Assembly (NCBI RefSeq): GCF_006345805.1
Contig: NC_043015.1
Span: 28,582,001 to 28,646,000, forward strand
Origin: Octopus sinensis
Taxonomy: Eukaryota
Direction of reading: 5' to 3'
Length of the DNA stretch: 64,000 nucleotides
Shown: positions 2,468-55,833 of the stretch, piece after piece
Layout of the letters: every line of letters begins with the position of its first letter
Position numbering within the stretch: position 1 is the stretch's first letter
Position numbers and translations under genes: made by a program
The notes under the pieces: model-generated
Seen by the model: only the letters and a program-made list of their open reading frames with translations
Told to the model about the DNA's origin: nothing
Database searches by the model: none

Positions 2468-3631
2468 TCATGTTGTAGGATTTGTTACTTTACCAATGAA
2501 ATGGATCATTTTAGTTCGGTTGTCAACAATTAAAAATGTGAATGGATGATTGACATCAAAATCTATACGATTTATAAAAATTTGTGCTGACGCGAAGGTC
2601 GTGACTATTCCACTTGCAGCAGCAGCTTCCGTTCCTTCTTCATTAACATCAACAAATGCTTTATGAAACATTTCACTGGCATAAATATTCTTCTCACCAC
2701 CAGTCATTCCAGATAAATCAGCTTTTAGAGGATCAAAAATATCAGAGAGTCCAAGCTTTTTCAAAACATCACCCAACTGAAAACTACTCTCTAAACAAAA
2801 TTTTGGCATATGTAATTTTAGACACATCATTTCAAATCCTTTTCTGTCAACAATGTCTTTGAGAAATTGAGCATTAATCTCCTTCTCTAAAGCAGCAAGG
2901 CCATTGATTTCATTGGGAAGAATTACAAACATACTAAATGCTTTCCCTATATAAGGTAACTCAACCACTTTATAGTTGTCACTTATTTTTGTATTAAATT
3001 CTTCAGATATATACATAAAATCATGAGATACAGTCTTGTCAGAGCTTAAATAAAACTTTCTAGATGAAGTTGCTTCTTCTGAGAATATTTCAGCCCACGT
3101 TCCTTTGAAGTATACCGCATTAATAAGAACTAGAACCGATTGAGGTGTCAAACTTCCACTTGGTAACAGATCAGTAATTTTGTTATTTGTGTTATTCTTA
3201 ACCCAATCATTAATAGTTATTCTTGTCTTCTCAGCATTTGTTATAAAGTCTACATTTTCAATATCTGAAAAGAAATATTTTACCATGTTGTTCTTGTAGT
3301 CTTCTGAAATAGGGAATTTTTCATTGGCACACAAACGATTCACTAAATTGGATGTGACGAGTTTATCTGAGTTTTTCAAAAGTGAAAAATATTCTTTAAA
3401 AGCTAAAGCTACAGAATCTGGATTTGATGTTATCTTCAAAACATTTTCAAACTGTTTGGAAGAGTTTTGTCTTGCTCCCAAATAAACCATTGATAAAACA
3501 GTAGCAACACTGAATGGTGACATGAAGACATTTTCATTGATTCCTGTAGCCACAGCTTGATAAAGACTGTTTGTAAAATAATCAATTGAAGCAGCAAGGT
3601 TACTGATGTCTTGTTTCTTTGCTGAGTCCAT
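2468..3631 (-). CDS. Serpin S1, intracellular (no signal peptide), inhibitory type; RCL SGIVTTFA-SAQIFINRID (P1-P1' about Ala-Ser)
   Basis: Intact 387-aa ORF with serpin motifs NVFMSPFSV, LINAVYFKGTW, MPKF, HKAFVDVNEEGTEAAAA and FDVNHPFTFLI; no hydrophobic N-terminus; coding region has no intron. Confidence 0.97.
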   Translation of the reverse strand: MDSAKKQDISNLAASIDYFTNSLYQAVATGINENVFMSPFSVATVLSMVYLGARQNSSKQFENVLKITSNPDSVALAFKEYFSLLKNSDKLVTSNLVNRLCANEKFPISEDYKNNMVKYFFSDIENVDFITNAEKTRITINDWVKNNTNNKITDLLPSGSLTPQSVLVLINAVYFKGTWAEIFSEEATSSRKFYLSSDKTVSHDFMYISEEFNTKISDNYKVVELPYIGKAFSMFVILPNEINGLAALEKEINAQFLKDIVDRKGFEMMCLKLHMPKFCLESSFQLGDVLKKLGLSDIFDPLKADLSGMTGGEKNIYASEMFHKAFVDVNEEGTEAAAASGIVTTFASAQIFINRIDFDVNHPFTFLIVDNRTKMIHFIGKVTNPTT

Positions 3632-3648
3632 ATTGTATACGATAGTAT

Positions 3649-3680
3649 CTGGAGAATATAGAATATGAAGAGAAAATATA
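3649..3680 (-). promoter_or_regulatory. 3' splice acceptor of a 5'-UTR intron upstream of the serpin coding exon (conserved before every minus-strand copy)
   Basis: Minus strand reads TTTTCTCTTCATATTCTATATTCTCCAG then a 17-nt leader then ATG. The leader is 17 nt in S1-S5 and S8 and 16 nt in S7, so its phase is not conserved, which fits a UTR. Confidence 0.7.
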
Positions 3681-52900: not shown

Positions 52901-54669
52901 CAAGCATGTCCATATGAGATATTATTTCTGCATGAATACTACAGAAAGTTTGCCTTTTGCGATGTATTTACTTTACATATAATATCCAGATGGATATGTA
53001 TATATACTGGCGAGCTGGCAGAAACATTAGCACACTGGGTGAAATACGTAACCATATTTCGTCTGTCGTTACGTTCCGAGTTCAAATTCCGCCAAGGTCG
53101 ACTTTGCCTTTCATCCTTTCGGGGTCGATAAATTAAGTACCAGTTACGTACTGGGGTCGATGTAATCGACTTAATCCCTTTGTCTGTCCTTGTTTGTCCA
53201 TTCTGTGTTTAGCCCCTTGTGGGTAGTAAAGATATATATATATTTAAGTATGCTGTGCATGAGAAGATCTGGCAGGACAAGTGAGACCATAAGCCGTGAC
53301 CTCTACATGGGATGTAGCCAATCCACTTATGCATACCTTTCCTTCTAGGGACAGAAAACTCTGCTTGTGAAGACTTGTTGAGGCAAGTGAAAATCAAAAT
53401 CGAAATCGATCAACATCAATGGAAATTGCAGCTGTGATACCAGTGCCGGTGGTATGTAAGAGAACCATCCGAACGTGGCCATTGCCAGCGCCGCCCCGTC
53501 TGGCCTCGGAAAAAGCACCCACTACACTCACGGAGTGGTTGGCATTAGGAAGGGCTTCTTAACTATACAGCAACAACTGTACTCTAGAAAATTTGACTGC
53601 TCCTGGGTGGGCTTGTACCATTTATTTTTTAGTCTGTTGCCAGCCCCGCCTGGCCCTCGTGCTGGTGGCCGTTTGCCAGTCCTGTCTGACACCTGTGCCG
53701 GTGGCACGTAAAAAGTACCCACTACACTCACGGAGTGGTTGGCGTTAAGAAGGGCATCCAGCTGTAGAAATACTGCCAGATCAGACTGGGCCTGGTGCAG
53801 CCTTCTGGCTTCCCAGACCCCAGTTTGAACCGTCCAACCCATGCTAGCACGGAAAGCGGACGCATGATGATGATGATGATGATGATGATTTGTTTGCATC
53901 TTGCTTAATATTTTCAAATATTTTTTTAAATGGAAATGTTGGTTTGGAAATATTAAATGAAGCCCCATCACTGGAATTTCAGTAACAGCAACAAAAATAG
54001 AAAAGTATATGGGAATTTCTTCACTGATTCTTGTTCTACTTATAGATAGAACATTCTAGAATAGACAGTATATATTCTCTTTGCTACCTTGAGAATATAT
54101 ATGTATATGGTACATTGGCTGTTAACTTTCCAAAAGTTTTGTAATGCCGCAATTATTGAAACAATGTAATTATTTTATCAAGATCCAAGACATAATTACG
54201 AAGGGTGAACACGGGCGCTCAAAAATTTCGAATGTCTAAATTTAAAACAAAGAATATAAAAGCCAGATGCAATCAACACATACATAATAATGGAATATTT
54301 ACTGAGATACTTTATTAACATGAAACATACAAATATTGATTTCACTTTATTCAACGAGAAAATAACGTTTACAGGCAACAGTAGATATATTGTTAAAATA
54401 GTAAACTTGCAAAGAAAGGATACTTTAAAAAGTGTCAAATTTTTCTGTCAATGTATAGCATATACAAATTCATAATATTGATTTGGATTAATGTGGTAGT
54501 ATAATATATCATTGAATAGATATGACCTTGGTTCTACACGATTACAATTATAATGTCCTAAGTCATTTTACTAAAAAAACGATTCTAAATAAATTTGTTC
54601 AGTTACATTCTCCACATAATACAATGTAGTATTCCATAAGAGGGAAATCTTTGACAGGGCAATATCATC

Positions 54670-55833
54670 TTATGTTGTAGGATTTGTTACTTTACCAATG
54701 AAATGGATAATTTTAGTTTGGTTGTCAACAATTAAAAATGTGAATGGATGATTGACATCAAAATCTATACGATTTATAAAAATTCGTGCTGACAGTAAGG
54801 TCATGACCATTCCAGTTGCAGCAGCAGCTTCCGTTCCTTCTTCATTAACATCAACAAATGCTTTATGAAACATTTCACTGGCATAAATATTCTTCTCACC
54901 ACCAGTCATTCCAGATAAATCAGCTTTTAGAGGATCAAAAATATCAGGGAGTCCAAGCTTTTTCAAAACTTCACCCAACTGAAAACTACTCTCGAAACGA
55001 AATTTTGGCATATGTAATACTAGACCCATCATTTCAAATCCTTTTCTGTCAACAATGTCTTTGAGAAATTGAGCATTAATCTCCTTCTCTAAAGCAGCAA
55101 GACCATTGATTTCATTGGGAAGAATTACAAACATACTAAATGCTTCTCCTATATAGGGTAACTCAACCACTTTATAGTTGTCGCTTATTTTTGTATTAAA
55201 TCCTTCATATATATACATAAAATCATGAGATACAGTCTTGTCAGAGCTTAAATAAAACTTTCTAGATGATGTTGCTTCTTCTGAGAATATTTCAGCCCAC
55301 GTTCCTTTAAAGTACACAGCATTAATAAGAACTAGAACCGATTGAGGTGTCAAACTTCCACTTGGTAACAGATCAGTAATTTTGTTATTTGTGTTATTCT
55401 TAACCCAATCATTAATAGTAATTCTTGTCTTCTCAGCATTTGTTATGAAGTCTACATTTTCAATATCTGAAAAGAAATATTTTACCATGTTGTTCTTGTA
55501 GTCTTCAGAAATAGGGAATTTTTCATTGGCGCACAAACGATTCACTGAATTGGATGTGACGAGTTTATCTGAGTTTTTCAAAAGTGAAAAATATTCTTTA
55601 AAAGCTAAAGCTACAGAATCTGGATTTGATGTTATCTTCAAAATATTTTCAAACTGTTTGGCAGAGTTTTGTCTTGCTCCCAAATAAACCATTGATAAAA
55701 CAGTAGCAACACTGAATGGTGACATGAAGACATTTTCATTGGTTCCTGTAGCCACAGCTTGGTAAAGACTGTTTGTAAAATAATCAATTGAAGCAGCAAG
55801 GTTACCGATGTCTTGTTTCTCTGCTGAGTCCAT
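54670..55833 (-). CDS. Serpin S8; RCL TGMVMTLL-SARIFINRID
   Basis: Intact 387-aa ORF with the same serpin motifs as S1. Confidence 0.97.
   Translation of the reverse strand: MDSAEKQDIGNLAASIDYFTNSLYQAVATGTNENVFMSPFSVATVLSMVYLGARQNSAKQFENILKITSNPDSVALAFKEYFSLLKNSDKLVTSNSVNRLCANEKFPISEDYKNNMVKYFFSDIENVDFITNAEKTRITINDWVKNNTNNKITDLLPSGSLTPQSVLVLINAVYFKGTWAEIFSEEATSSRKFYLSSDKTVSHDFMYIYEGFNTKISDNYKVVELPYIGEAFSMFVILPNEINGLAALEKEINAQFLKDIVDRKGFEMMGLVLHMPKFRFESSFQLGEVLKKLGLPDIFDPLKADLSGMTGGEKNIYASEMFHKAFVDVNEEGTEAAAATGMVMTLLSARIFINRIDFDVNHPFTFLIVDNQTKIIHFIGKVTNPTT

What the first reader, a model, noticed from the sequence alone, without database searches (positions are those of the whole stretch)
2468..55833. 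Tandem array of single-coding-exon serpins with a frozen scaffold and non-homologous, swapped reactive-centre loops
Seen in sequence: seven minus-strand paralogs are nearly identical over the N-terminal half and share the hinge EEGTEAAAA. The bait loop is SGIVTTFA-SAQIFINRID (S1), TGIVMTFA-SAQIFINRID (S2), TGMFAMDL-SGYFGMPMD (S3), SGMVVSNY-MSRIGMQ (S4/S5), TKARLVPC-KGRRVINPLD (S7) and TGMVMTLL-SARIFINRID (S8). These fall into four classes with little resemblance beyond the hinge and differ in length (15-18 residues from P8 to FDVN). Established: the small-residue hinge marks inhibitory serpins, P1 largely sets specificity, and accelerated RCL evolution is known in mammalian serpin clusters and, via alternative RCL exons, in Manduca serpin-1. 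Inference: this is a young, still-expanding intracellular anti-protease repertoire. Predicted P1 by the 17-residue rule (+/-1) is Ala, Ala, Leu, Tyr, Cys and Leu. It diversifies inside one exon rather than through exon cassettes, and may act in immunity or in self-protection from the animal's own secreted proteases.
Basis: partly seen in the sequence, partly recalled or inferred. Interest (0 to 1): 0.8.

Follow-up and report, generated by a model that had tools for sequence, protein, structure and literature searches.

The report
Octopus tandem serpin array, hypervariable loops
This window is part of a large, recently duplicated cluster of octopus protease-inhibitor (serpin) genes whose bait loops are evolving fast under selection, a pattern well known from mammals and insects but apparently not yet described in cephalopods.

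Summary
Four are intact ORFs. S3, S4 and S5 are broken only by 1-nt homopolymer indels; for S3 these are almost certainly assembly errors.

The interpretation needs correcting.
- The scaffold is not frozen. It diverges as much as the non-coding flanks (1.5-5.6% versus 0.5-7%; dN/dS 0.24-0.97), so it is simply young.
- The loops are not unrelated. Neighbouring copies and O. vulgaris supply intermediates, and five window copies form one young "long-loop" clade.
- Loop changes are almost all nonsynonymous (22 N : 2 S). Their rate is 3.2 times the scaffold synonymous rate and peaks at P2-P1. Three sheet-C patches co-vary, and short gene-conversion tracts shuffle them.
- Every body exon keeps a 3' splice site. 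Upstream of the window, gene models splice one signal-peptide exon to alternative short-loop bodies, so "single exon, intracellular" holds at best for the long-loop copies.

The array spans at least 150 kb, and its copy number may be inflated by false duplication. Verdict: a new member of a known kind, of moderate interest.

The parts
2468..3631 (-). S1: intact 387-aa serpin body ORF; loop 2561-2614 (SGIVTTFASAQIFINRID), hinge 2615-2641; predicted P1 Ala
3632..3676 (-). S1 upstream 3' splice site (polypyrimidine tract + CAG) and 18-nt in-frame linker (D)TIVYN. The same element lies at 15900-15944, 22407-22451, 35095-35139, 37664-37708 and 55834-55878. In S7 (43049-43093) the linker is 17 nt, out of frame with the leader.
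14736..15899 (-). S2: intact 387-aa ORF; loop 14829-14882 (TGIVMTFASAQIFINRID); CDS 100% identical to a copy in L002, 53 kb to the left
21250..22406 (-). S3: body with six 1-nt homopolymer indels in its CDS; loop about 21343-21393 (TGMFAMDLSGYFGMPMD). Five of the six ungapped pieces are 100% identical to intact P0003; the sixth (aa 230-333, 92%) runs across one of the indels. P0003 is encoded at L002:10001.
33947..35094 (-). S4: short-loop body (SGMVVSNYMSRIGMQ, 34033-34077) with a 1-nt deletion in a T run straight after the loop; 99.5% identical over 2.1 kb to the intact gene at L001:41360, which is annotated with the leader as isoform X3
36510..37663 (-). S5: short-loop body (same loop as S4, 36603-36647) with one 1-nt homopolymer deletion at CDS nt 837; no near-identical twin found
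38209..39241 (+). S6: inverted, decayed serpin fragment (many stops, 42-76% identity), head-to-head with S5 and 546 bp from it
41885..43048 (-). S7: intact 387-aa ORF; loop 41978-42031 (TKARLVPCKGRRVINPLD); predicted P1 Cys flanked by basic residues
54670..55833 (-). S8: intact 387-aa ORF; loop 54763-54816 (TGMVMTLLSARIFINRID); intermediate between the short-loop copy L1_33612 and S1/S2

Best explanation
The window is the middle of a tandem array, at least 150 kb long, of leukocyte-elastase-inhibitor-like (ov-serpin-like) inhibitory serpin genes on an Octopus sinensis chromosome. Each serpin body is one exon preceded by a conserved 3' splice site. Shown: copies arise by recent segmental duplication, with body-to-body spacing of 2.6-12.8 kb that carries repeats and a (GAA)n tract. 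They exchange short tracts by gene conversion. Their differences are concentrated in nonsynonymous changes at loop positions P6 to P3' (peak at P2-P1) and in three patches on or beside beta-sheet C, next to the loop. Inferred: this is diversifying selection producing suicide-substrate inhibitors with different protease specificities. Predicted P1 is mostly hydrophobic (Ala, Leu, Met, Phe, Tyr), which suggests elastase- or chymotrypsin-like targets; S7 has a Cys/basic loop. The ancestral short-loop copies upstream can be secreted through a shared signal-peptide exon. The window's young long-loop clade (S1, S2, S3, S7, S8), defined by a 2-3-residue P'-side insertion, is so far known only as leaderless and therefore probably cytoplasmic proteins. 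The biological role is not established; plausible roles are defence against pathogen proteases or control of the animal's own digestive or salivary serine proteases.
For: Family and fold: PF00079 at E ~1e-107; best solved relatives are antithrombin and SERPINB3/B4 (E ~1e-67) and leukocyte elastase inhibitor 4ga7 (6e-62); AlphaFold model pLDDT 90.5 with only residues 337-352 disordered. Youth: multi-kb blocks including flanks are 96-99.9% identical, and scaffold divergence is about equal to flank divergence. Selection: for six alignable copies the loop N:S is 22:2 against 61.5:36.5 in the scaffold (Fisher p = 0.0065). Loop N rate is 3.2 times the scaffold S rate (p = 3.6e-5), while loop S rate equals scaffold S rate (ratio 1.07). 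The peak is at alignment columns 346-347, which are P2 and P1. Patches at aa 181-190, 201-220 and 261-280 have N:S 39:5 against 43.5:47.5 elsewhere (post hoc) and map to the s3A-s4C loop, s3C and s2C. Homology of loops: graded series and shared insertion; long-loop clade with support 94/97. Gene conversion: the S2 patch at nt 545-556 matches S7; 42% of site pairs fail the four-gamete test; PHI-like p = 0.017; the S4-type loop is shared with O. bimaculoides on scaffolds that do not group together. Leader: L001:10001 exon with a phase-1 donor, three isoforms sharing it; the same layout in O. bimaculoides; conserved acceptors; no long-loop protein carries a leader.
Against: No expression, protein or inhibition data were available, and the gene models may rest on multi-mapping RNA-seq reads. 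Substitution counts are small and tree-free, and recombination violates the assumptions of any dN/dS estimate. For the most divergent loops (S3, S4, S7) synonymous sites are saturated too, so selection cannot be separated from older ancestry there. Part of the array may be a false duplication, which would reduce the number of independent copies. The frameshifts in S4 and S5 could be real. Because flanks are so similar, conservation of the splice acceptor in the young copies carries little weight.
Confidence: 0.65

Rival explanations
1. Concerted evolution alone: the loop classes are old lineages kept distinct by selection, while the rest of each gene and its flanks are repeatedly homogenised by gene conversion or unequal crossing-over. 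On this view the contrast between a similar scaffold and different loops does not require fast adaptive change in young duplicates.
For: The S4-type loop is shared by O. sinensis and O. bimaculoides, yet Obim_23154 groups with its neighbour Obim_28665, which has a different loop (100/93). Ovul_P0006 (long loop) groups with short-loop Ovul_12189 (97/88). Mosaic tracts and four-gamete failures are present. Loop synonymous divergence is 0.5-0.78 for S4- and S7-type loops against scaffold dS of 0.08-0.15.
Against: Within the closely related subsets the loop synonymous rate equals the scaffold rate while the nonsynonymous rate is 7 times the scaffold N rate, which conversion alone does not predict. 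Non-coding flanks are collinear for several kb, consistent with duplication of whole units. Graded intermediates (L1_33612 to S8 to S2 to S1) look like stepwise change in place.
Confidence: 0.2
2. One reading: strictly single-exon, intracellular serpins with a constrained (frozen) scaffold whose loops are unrelated sequences swapped in.
For: The 387-aa ORFs are uninterrupted and lack an N-terminal hydrophobic segment. No long-loop protein with a leader is on record. Within the window alone the four loop classes are hard to align.
Against: Scaffold divergence is about equal to neutral flank divergence. Loops are connected by intermediates and a shared insertion. A conserved splice acceptor is present, and a shared signal-peptide exon is used by sister copies, including S4's twin.
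Confidence: 0.1
3. Largely an artefact or a gene graveyard: the copies are haplotype or false duplications in a long-read assembly, and/or decaying pseudogenes whose loops drift freely.
For: The window's S3 unit differs from L002 by 3 mismatches but 74 gap positions in 5.1 kb. The S2 CDS is identical to L2_17649, and S4 is 99.5% identical to L1_41360. Three of the seven copies are frame-broken in the window.
Against: The seven window copies differ from each other by 1.5-5.6% with distinct loops, so they are not one locus. All length changes in loops are in frame, the hinge is invariant, and synonymous changes outnumber expectation under drift in the scaffold (dN/dS < 1). Orthologous arrays exist in two other octopus genomes.
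Confidence: 0.05

Closest known systems
Tandem serpin clusters with accelerated reactive-centre evolution: rodent Serpina1/Serpina3 clusters (Hill and Hastie 1987, recalled from memory), woodrat SERPINA duplicates (PMC12646145), primate SERPINB3/B4 (PMC4136820), parasitoid CvT-serpins (PMC10735303)
   Same: Tandem young paralogues, a conserved inhibitory hinge, an excess of nonsynonymous change centred on P1 and its neighbours, and an inferred diversification of target proteases.
   Different: The host is a cephalopod mollusc. The whole body is a single exon. Loop length also changes (a 2-3-codon P'-side insertion defines a clade). Three sheet-C patches co-vary and are shuffled by short conversion tracts. 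No targets are known.
Serpin genes diversified by alternative splicing: Manduca sexta serpin-1 (recalled from memory; cited within PMC10513286) and Pteromalus PpSerpin-1 (PMC10513286)
   Same: PpSerpin-1 has N-terminal isoforms with and without a signal peptide and many alternative specificity-determining 3' exons. Here too one leader exon is optional (isoforms X1 versus X4) and is joined to alternative downstream exons that differ in the loop.
   Different: In insects the alternative exon starts at the hinge and encodes only the loop and C-terminus. Here there is no intron at the hinge, and the alternative unit is the entire 384-387-aa serpin body with its own stop codon.
Amphioctopus fangsiao serpin (P0016, UniProt A0A023NGS8), a named octopod serpin in the database
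   Same: Same octopod subfamily (61% identity, full coverage), has a signal-peptide leader, and has a short loop of the same length.
   Different: It belongs to a different paralogue group (with P0014 and P0015). Nothing I found describes it as part of an array or as loop-hypervariable.
Human SERPINB1 (leukocyte elastase inhibitor, PDB 4ga7) and SERPINB3/B4 (2zv6, 4zk0); antithrombin (1ant)
   Same: About 37-40% identity over the full length, the EEGTEAAAA-type hinge, and no N-terminal signal in the 387-aa form (as in clade B).
   Different: Clade membership across phyla is not established. Antithrombin scores as high as the clade B proteins, so the 'leukocyte elastase inhibitor-like' name is only a best-hit label.

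Membership tests
Serpin superfamily (Pfam PF00079) | Full-length match to the serpin domain above the curated cut-off | tested here: met
   360-368 bits against a cut-off of 27, profile positions 4-370 of 370, for S1, S2, S7 and S8
Serpin superfamily (Pfam PF00079) | Native serpin fold with an exposed, flexible reactive-centre loop | tested here: met
   AlphaFold2 model pLDDT 90.5, pTM 0.89; the only segment below 50 is residues 337-352; the strand and helix order matches serpins. This is a prediction, not an experiment.
Inhibitory serpins | Hinge consensus: P17 Glu, P15 Gly, P14 Thr/Ser, P12-P9 small residues | tested here: met
   EEGTEAAAA is invariant in all seven copies and in the neighbouring copies
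Inhibitory serpins | Forms a covalent, SDS-stable complex with a target protease after cleavage at P1-P1' | not testable with these tools
   Needs recombinant protein and protease assays
Intracellular ov-serpin / clade-B-like serpins | No cleavable N-terminal signal peptide | tested here: inconclusive
   The 387-aa ORFs lack a hydrophobic N-terminus (maximum Kyte-Doolittle 0.85 against 2.0-3.2 for leaders), and no long-loop protein with a leader is on record. But every body keeps a splice acceptor in frame with a signal-peptide exon that sister copies use.
Loop-cassette serpin genes (Manduca serpin-1 type) | Constant body exons plus mutually exclusive exons that begin at the hinge and encode the loop | tested here: not met
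   Hinge, loop and C-terminus are contiguous with the body in one ORF, and no alternative loop-only exons were found by tblastn
Tandem serpin clusters with accelerated loop evolution | Tandem paralogues in which loop nonsynonymous change exceeds the neutral (synonymous) rate | tested here: met
   Loop N rate is 3.2 times the scaffold S rate (p = 3.6e-5), and N:S is 22:2. Limited power, and recombination is present.

The most novel reading that the evidence does not exclude
The array works as a 'variable-body' locus. A single signal-peptide exon, and perhaps an alternative non-coding first exon, is spliced to any one of more than a dozen complete serpin-body exons spread over about 95 kb or more. 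Exon choice rather than separate promoters would then decide which inhibitor a cell makes and whether it is secreted or cytoplasmic. The logic resembles the clustered protocadherin or UGT1A loci, but with variable 3'-terminal exons. The window's copies, which all keep the acceptor, would take part in this.
Probability: 0.15. Interest if true: 0.65.

Novelty: new member of a known kind. Interest (0 to 1): 0.4.

Why it matters
It extends the classic picture of tandem serpin duplication with adaptive loop change to cephalopods, where immune and venom/digestive protease biology is poorly known. I found no paper in the searchable library that describes this array. It gives a concrete set of natural loop variants (P1 Ala, Leu, Met, Phe, Tyr, Cys; short and long P' sides) on a nearly constant scaffold, which is convenient for specificity studies. 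It also flags co-varying sheet-C patches as candidate exosites. The shared-leader, alternative-whole-body arrangement, if confirmed by transcripts, would be an unusual way to build an inhibitor repertoire. On a practical level, this region of the O. sinensis assembly contains homopolymer indel errors and possibly a false 53-kb duplication that affect gene annotation.

Tried and rejected
1. I searched the window and L002 for a signal-peptide leader exon by tblastn with five leaders and by blastn-short with the L001 exon, and found only chance 4-13-letter matches. The nearest leader is 33.5 kb beyond the right end of the window.
2. An exact look-up of the S7 protein found no gene on record. 99% relatives (P0002, P0133) exist elsewhere on the chromosome.
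3. I considered S3 as a decaying pseudogene and rejected it. All indels lie in homopolymers, five of its six ungapped pieces are 100% identical to intact P0003 (the sixth, aa 230-333, spans an indel), and the whole 5.1-kb unit differs from the L002 copy by 3 substitutions and 74 gap positions.
4. I considered loop-only alternative exons (Manduca type) and found none.
5. A Pfam scan of four intergenic ORFs (6596-7108, 10960-11487, 19948-20463, 50449-50985) gave no family.
6. A leader-restricted database search for leader plus long-loop proteins returned only short-loop bodies.
7. Literature searches for octopus or cephalopod serpins found only mentions of 'SerpinB10' and haemocyte serpin transcripts responding to Aggregata infection, and nothing on the array.
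8. Pairwise dN/dS on the most divergent loops (S3, S4, S7) was uninformative because both site classes are saturated or misaligned.
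Full report
**What is there.** Listing ORFs and running tblastn with the first ORF shows seven serpin bodies on the minus strand: S1 2468-3631, S2 14736-15899, S3 about 21250-22406, S4 about 33947-35094, S5 about 36510-37663, S7 41885-43048 and S8 54670-55833. 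There is also one inverted fragment riddled with stops, S6 at 38209-39241. The four uninterrupted ORFs (S1, S2, S7, S8; 387 aa each) match Pfam Serpin PF00079 end to end at E ~1e-107.

**Where it comes from.** The closest proteins are Octopus sinensis 'leukocyte elastase inhibitor-like' models on a 53.9-Mb chromosome, followed by O. bimaculoides, O. vulgaris and Argonauta. A fetched locus overlaps the window exactly (L001 43524-52514 = window 64000-55010). That places the window at CM016877.1:28,582,001-28,646,000.

**The array extends beyond the window.** L001 lies upstream in the sense of the genes and holds six more bodies spaced about 3 kb apart. L002 lies 20-40 kb to the left and holds two more. 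At least 15 bodies therefore lie within about 150 kb.

**The broken copies.** Every 1-nt indel that interrupts S3 (six in the CDS), S4 and S5 sits in a run of three or four identical bases.
- S3: five of its six ungapped pieces are 100% identical to the intact protein P0003, which is encoded at L002:10001; the sixth (aa 230-333, 92%) runs across one of the indels. The 5.1-kb S3 unit differs from the L002 copy by 3 substitutions but 74 gap positions. That is the signature of unpolished long-read sequence, not decay.
- S4: it is 99.5% identical over 2.1 kb to the intact gene at L001:41360.
- S5: it has no twin, so its single frameshift is unresolved.

L002 is collinear with window 14.1-33.5 kb at 99.7-99.9% substitution identity, and the S2 CDS is identical to L2_17649. 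A 53-kb higher-order repeat is therefore either extremely recent or a false duplication, and copy number needs checking with reads.

**'Frozen scaffold'.** Self-comparison shows that whole units repeat at 96-99% identity, several kb of non-coding DNA included. Region by region:

| Region | Nucleotide divergence between copies |
|---|---|
| CDS outside the loop | 1.5-5.6% |
| Homologous flanks, same pairs | 0.5-7% |

For S1 versus S3 the flanks differ by 0.5% and 2.0% while the scaffold differs by 3.1%. Nei-Gojobori estimates for ten intact bodies give scaffold dS of 0.025-0.15 and dN/dS of 0.24-0.97. The scaffold is under only mild constraint. It looks invariant because the duplications are young.

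**The loops.** Between classes the 54-nt loop differs at 40-78% of positions, so the contrast with the scaffold is real. The loops are nevertheless related.
- Adding the neighbouring copies gives a graded series:

| Copy | Loop |
|---|---|
| L1_22127 (the form also seen in O. bimaculoides P0012 and, nearly, Argonauta) | TGMVMMAL-SAQIGMD |
| L1_33612 (identical in O. vulgaris P0128) | TGMVMTLM-SAQIGMD |
| S8 | TGMVMTLL-SARIFINRID |
| S2 | TGIVMTFA-SAQIFINRID |
| S1 | SGIVTTFA-SAQIFINRID |

- The P'-side insertion (…F/V-I-N-x-x-D) is shared by S1, S2, S8, S7 (RVINPLD) and O. vulgaris (NKFFINRMD), with variants in S3 and P0006.
- A maximum-likelihood tree of the scaffold with the loop removed puts S1, S2, S3, S7, S8 and an O. 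vulgaris copy in one 'long-loop' clade, with support 94/97.

**Selection.** I used a tree-free minimum-step count per codon column on the six copies whose loops align without doubt.

| Measure | Loop | Scaffold |
|---|---|---|
| Nonsynonymous : synonymous steps | 22 : 2 | 61.5 : 36.5 |

- The N:S difference gives Fisher p = 0.0065.
- Loop nonsynonymous density is 3.2 times the scaffold synonymous density (binomial p = 3.6e-5).
- Loop synonymous density equals the scaffold's (ratio 1.07). This argues against a mutational hotspot or import of old diverged sequence for these copies.
- Variability peaks at alignment columns 346-347. These are P2 and P1 when P17 is the first hinge Glu, the same count that places Arg393 of antithrombin at P1 in the HMMER alignment.
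- For S3-, S4- and S7-type loops both site classes are saturated, so no such statement can be made.

**Beyond the loop.** Three further stretches are rich in nonsynonymous change: aa 181-190 (13 N: 1 S), 201-220 (10: 2) and 261-280 (16: 2). Together they give 39:5 against 43.5:47.5 in the rest of the scaffold (post hoc windows, p = 4e-6). An AlphaFold2 model of S1 (pLDDT 90.5, pTM 0.89) has residues 337-352 as its only disordered segment. It places the patches in the s3A-s4C loop, in s3C and in s2C, that is, on or beside beta-sheet C at the loop end of the molecule; naming these elements relies on my knowledge of serpin topology. Residues 208-211 align with the antithrombin segment MMYQEGKF. 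From memory, that segment carries the factor Xa/IXa exosite residues Tyr253 and Glu255. I infer that these patches are exosite surfaces co-evolving with the loop.

**Gene conversion.** Informative-site patterns are mosaic. S2 differs from its near-twin S1 by a short tract at nt 545-556 that is identical to S7 (ETFGKK versus EIFSEE). Of scaffold site pairs, 42% fail the four-gamete test, and neighbouring sites are more compatible than permuted ones (p = 0.017). Across species, the clearly orthologous S4-type loop (O. sinensis SGMVVSNYMSRIGMQ, O. bimaculoides TGMVVTNYMLRIGMQ) sits on scaffolds that do not group together. Obim_23154 instead pairs with its neighbour Obim_28665, which has a different loop (100/93). 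So 'swapping' has a kernel of truth. It is exchange of short homologous tracts among paralogues, acting together with selection; it is not insertion of unrelated loops.

**Gene structure and location of the proteins.**
- Several octopod relatives are 410-413 aa long and begin with a hydrophobic leader.
- In O. sinensis that leader (MARIIPGFPFWVLLFCMSQQTVS) is one small exon at L001:10001. This is equivalent to window coordinate 97,523, which is 33.5 kb beyond the right end. It has a phase-1 GT donor.
- Gene models splice it to three alternative whole bodies 12, 15 and 31 kb downstream (isoforms X1 to X3). Isoform X4 is the first of these bodies without the leader.
- O. bimaculoides has the same layout, and P0004 and P0009 share an identical leader on different bodies.
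- Every body in the window keeps a polypyrimidine tract plus CAG or TAG exactly 18 nt before its ATG, in frame with that donor. S7 is the exception, with a 17-nt linker.
- No leader exon exists in the window or in L002. A database search restricted to the leader finds it only on short-loop bodies.
- The 387-aa N-terminus is not hydrophobic.

My reading: the family has secreted members that use a shared leader, and S4's twin is one of them. The long-loop copies are, on present evidence, leaderless, and their acceptor probably serves an untranslated first exon. Because the flanks are so young, conservation of the acceptor in these copies is weak evidence either way.

**Comparison and novelty.** Tandem serpin duplicates with adaptive change around P1 are well documented: woodrat SERPINA (PMC12646145), SERPINB3/B4 (PMC4136820), parasitoid CvT-serpins (PMC10735303), and the classic rodent cases, which I recall from memory. 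Insect serpins diversify by loop-only alternative exons and by optional signal-peptide exons (PMC10513286). The octopus array fails the defining feature of the loop-cassette type, because there is no intron at the hinge. It fits the tandem-cluster type. Library searches found no description of it. They found only 'SerpinB10' and haemocyte serpin transcripts responding to Aggregata infection in O. vulgaris. I therefore rate it a new member of a known kind. The shared-leader, alternative-whole-body arrangement is the one feature that could raise its interest if transcripts confirm it.

**Limits.** I had no expression or biochemical data. The counts are small, recombination is present, and the assembly in this region is imperfect.

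Noticed in passing
window 14104-33558 versus L002 1-19444 (CM016877.1:28,541,139-28,562,299): A repeat with a period of about 53 kb has almost no substitutions (for example 3 in 5.1 kb) but many 1-nt gaps (74 in the same stretch). It is either a very recent segmental duplication or a false (haplotype) duplication with one unpolished copy.
   Followed up: partly
window 38209-39241 (+) with S5 at 37663 (-); L001 24591, 30053, 33065, 36078, 38549 (antisense fragments): A recurring module: an inverted, decayed N-terminal serpin fragment lies head-to-head about 546 bp from the ATG of an intact body. It is repeated with the roughly 3-kb short-loop units upstream of the window.
   Followed up: partly
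window 8482-8945 and about 47941-48492: A long (GAA)n microsatellite (155 copies, 85% matches) lies inside the large repeat units and produces spurious poly-K/E/R and poly-S/F ORFs on both strands.
   Followed up: partly
window 10960-11487 (+) and 50449-50985 (+): A duplicated 175-178-aa ORF (MVLGLKHLSYDERLKTLDLYSLEKRRRRGDL...) has no Pfam match. From memory it resembles the C-terminal tail of LINE-type retrotransposon ORF2 proteins, so it is probably a transposon remnant carried along in the duplication unit.
   Followed up: partly
window S7 loop 41978-42031: S7's loop has a K-G-R-R stretch immediately after the predicted P1 Cys. If the scissile bond is shifted by a few residues in this long loop, the target could be a basic-residue-specific (trypsin- or convertase-like) protease. 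S7 is also the only copy whose linker is out of frame with the leader.
   Followed up: no
database models P0007, P0122, P0125, P0126: There are annotation artefacts in the array. A 342-aa model of S2 is truncated inside the loop. An O. sinensis 411-aa model has a nonsense N-terminus, apparently caused by a frameshift in the body at L001:36625. O. vulgaris has 571-aa and 1736-aa models that look too long for one serpin and may fuse several tandem copies (I did not inspect them).
   Followed up: no
window 35094-33950 (S4) and 37663-36513 (S5): S4 and S5 have identical loops (0 differences in 45 nt) although their scaffolds differ by 3.4% and their flanks are unrelated beyond about 100 bp. This is compatible with conservation of this old loop class or with a conversion tract, and is not significant on its own (p about 0.2).
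   Followed up: partly
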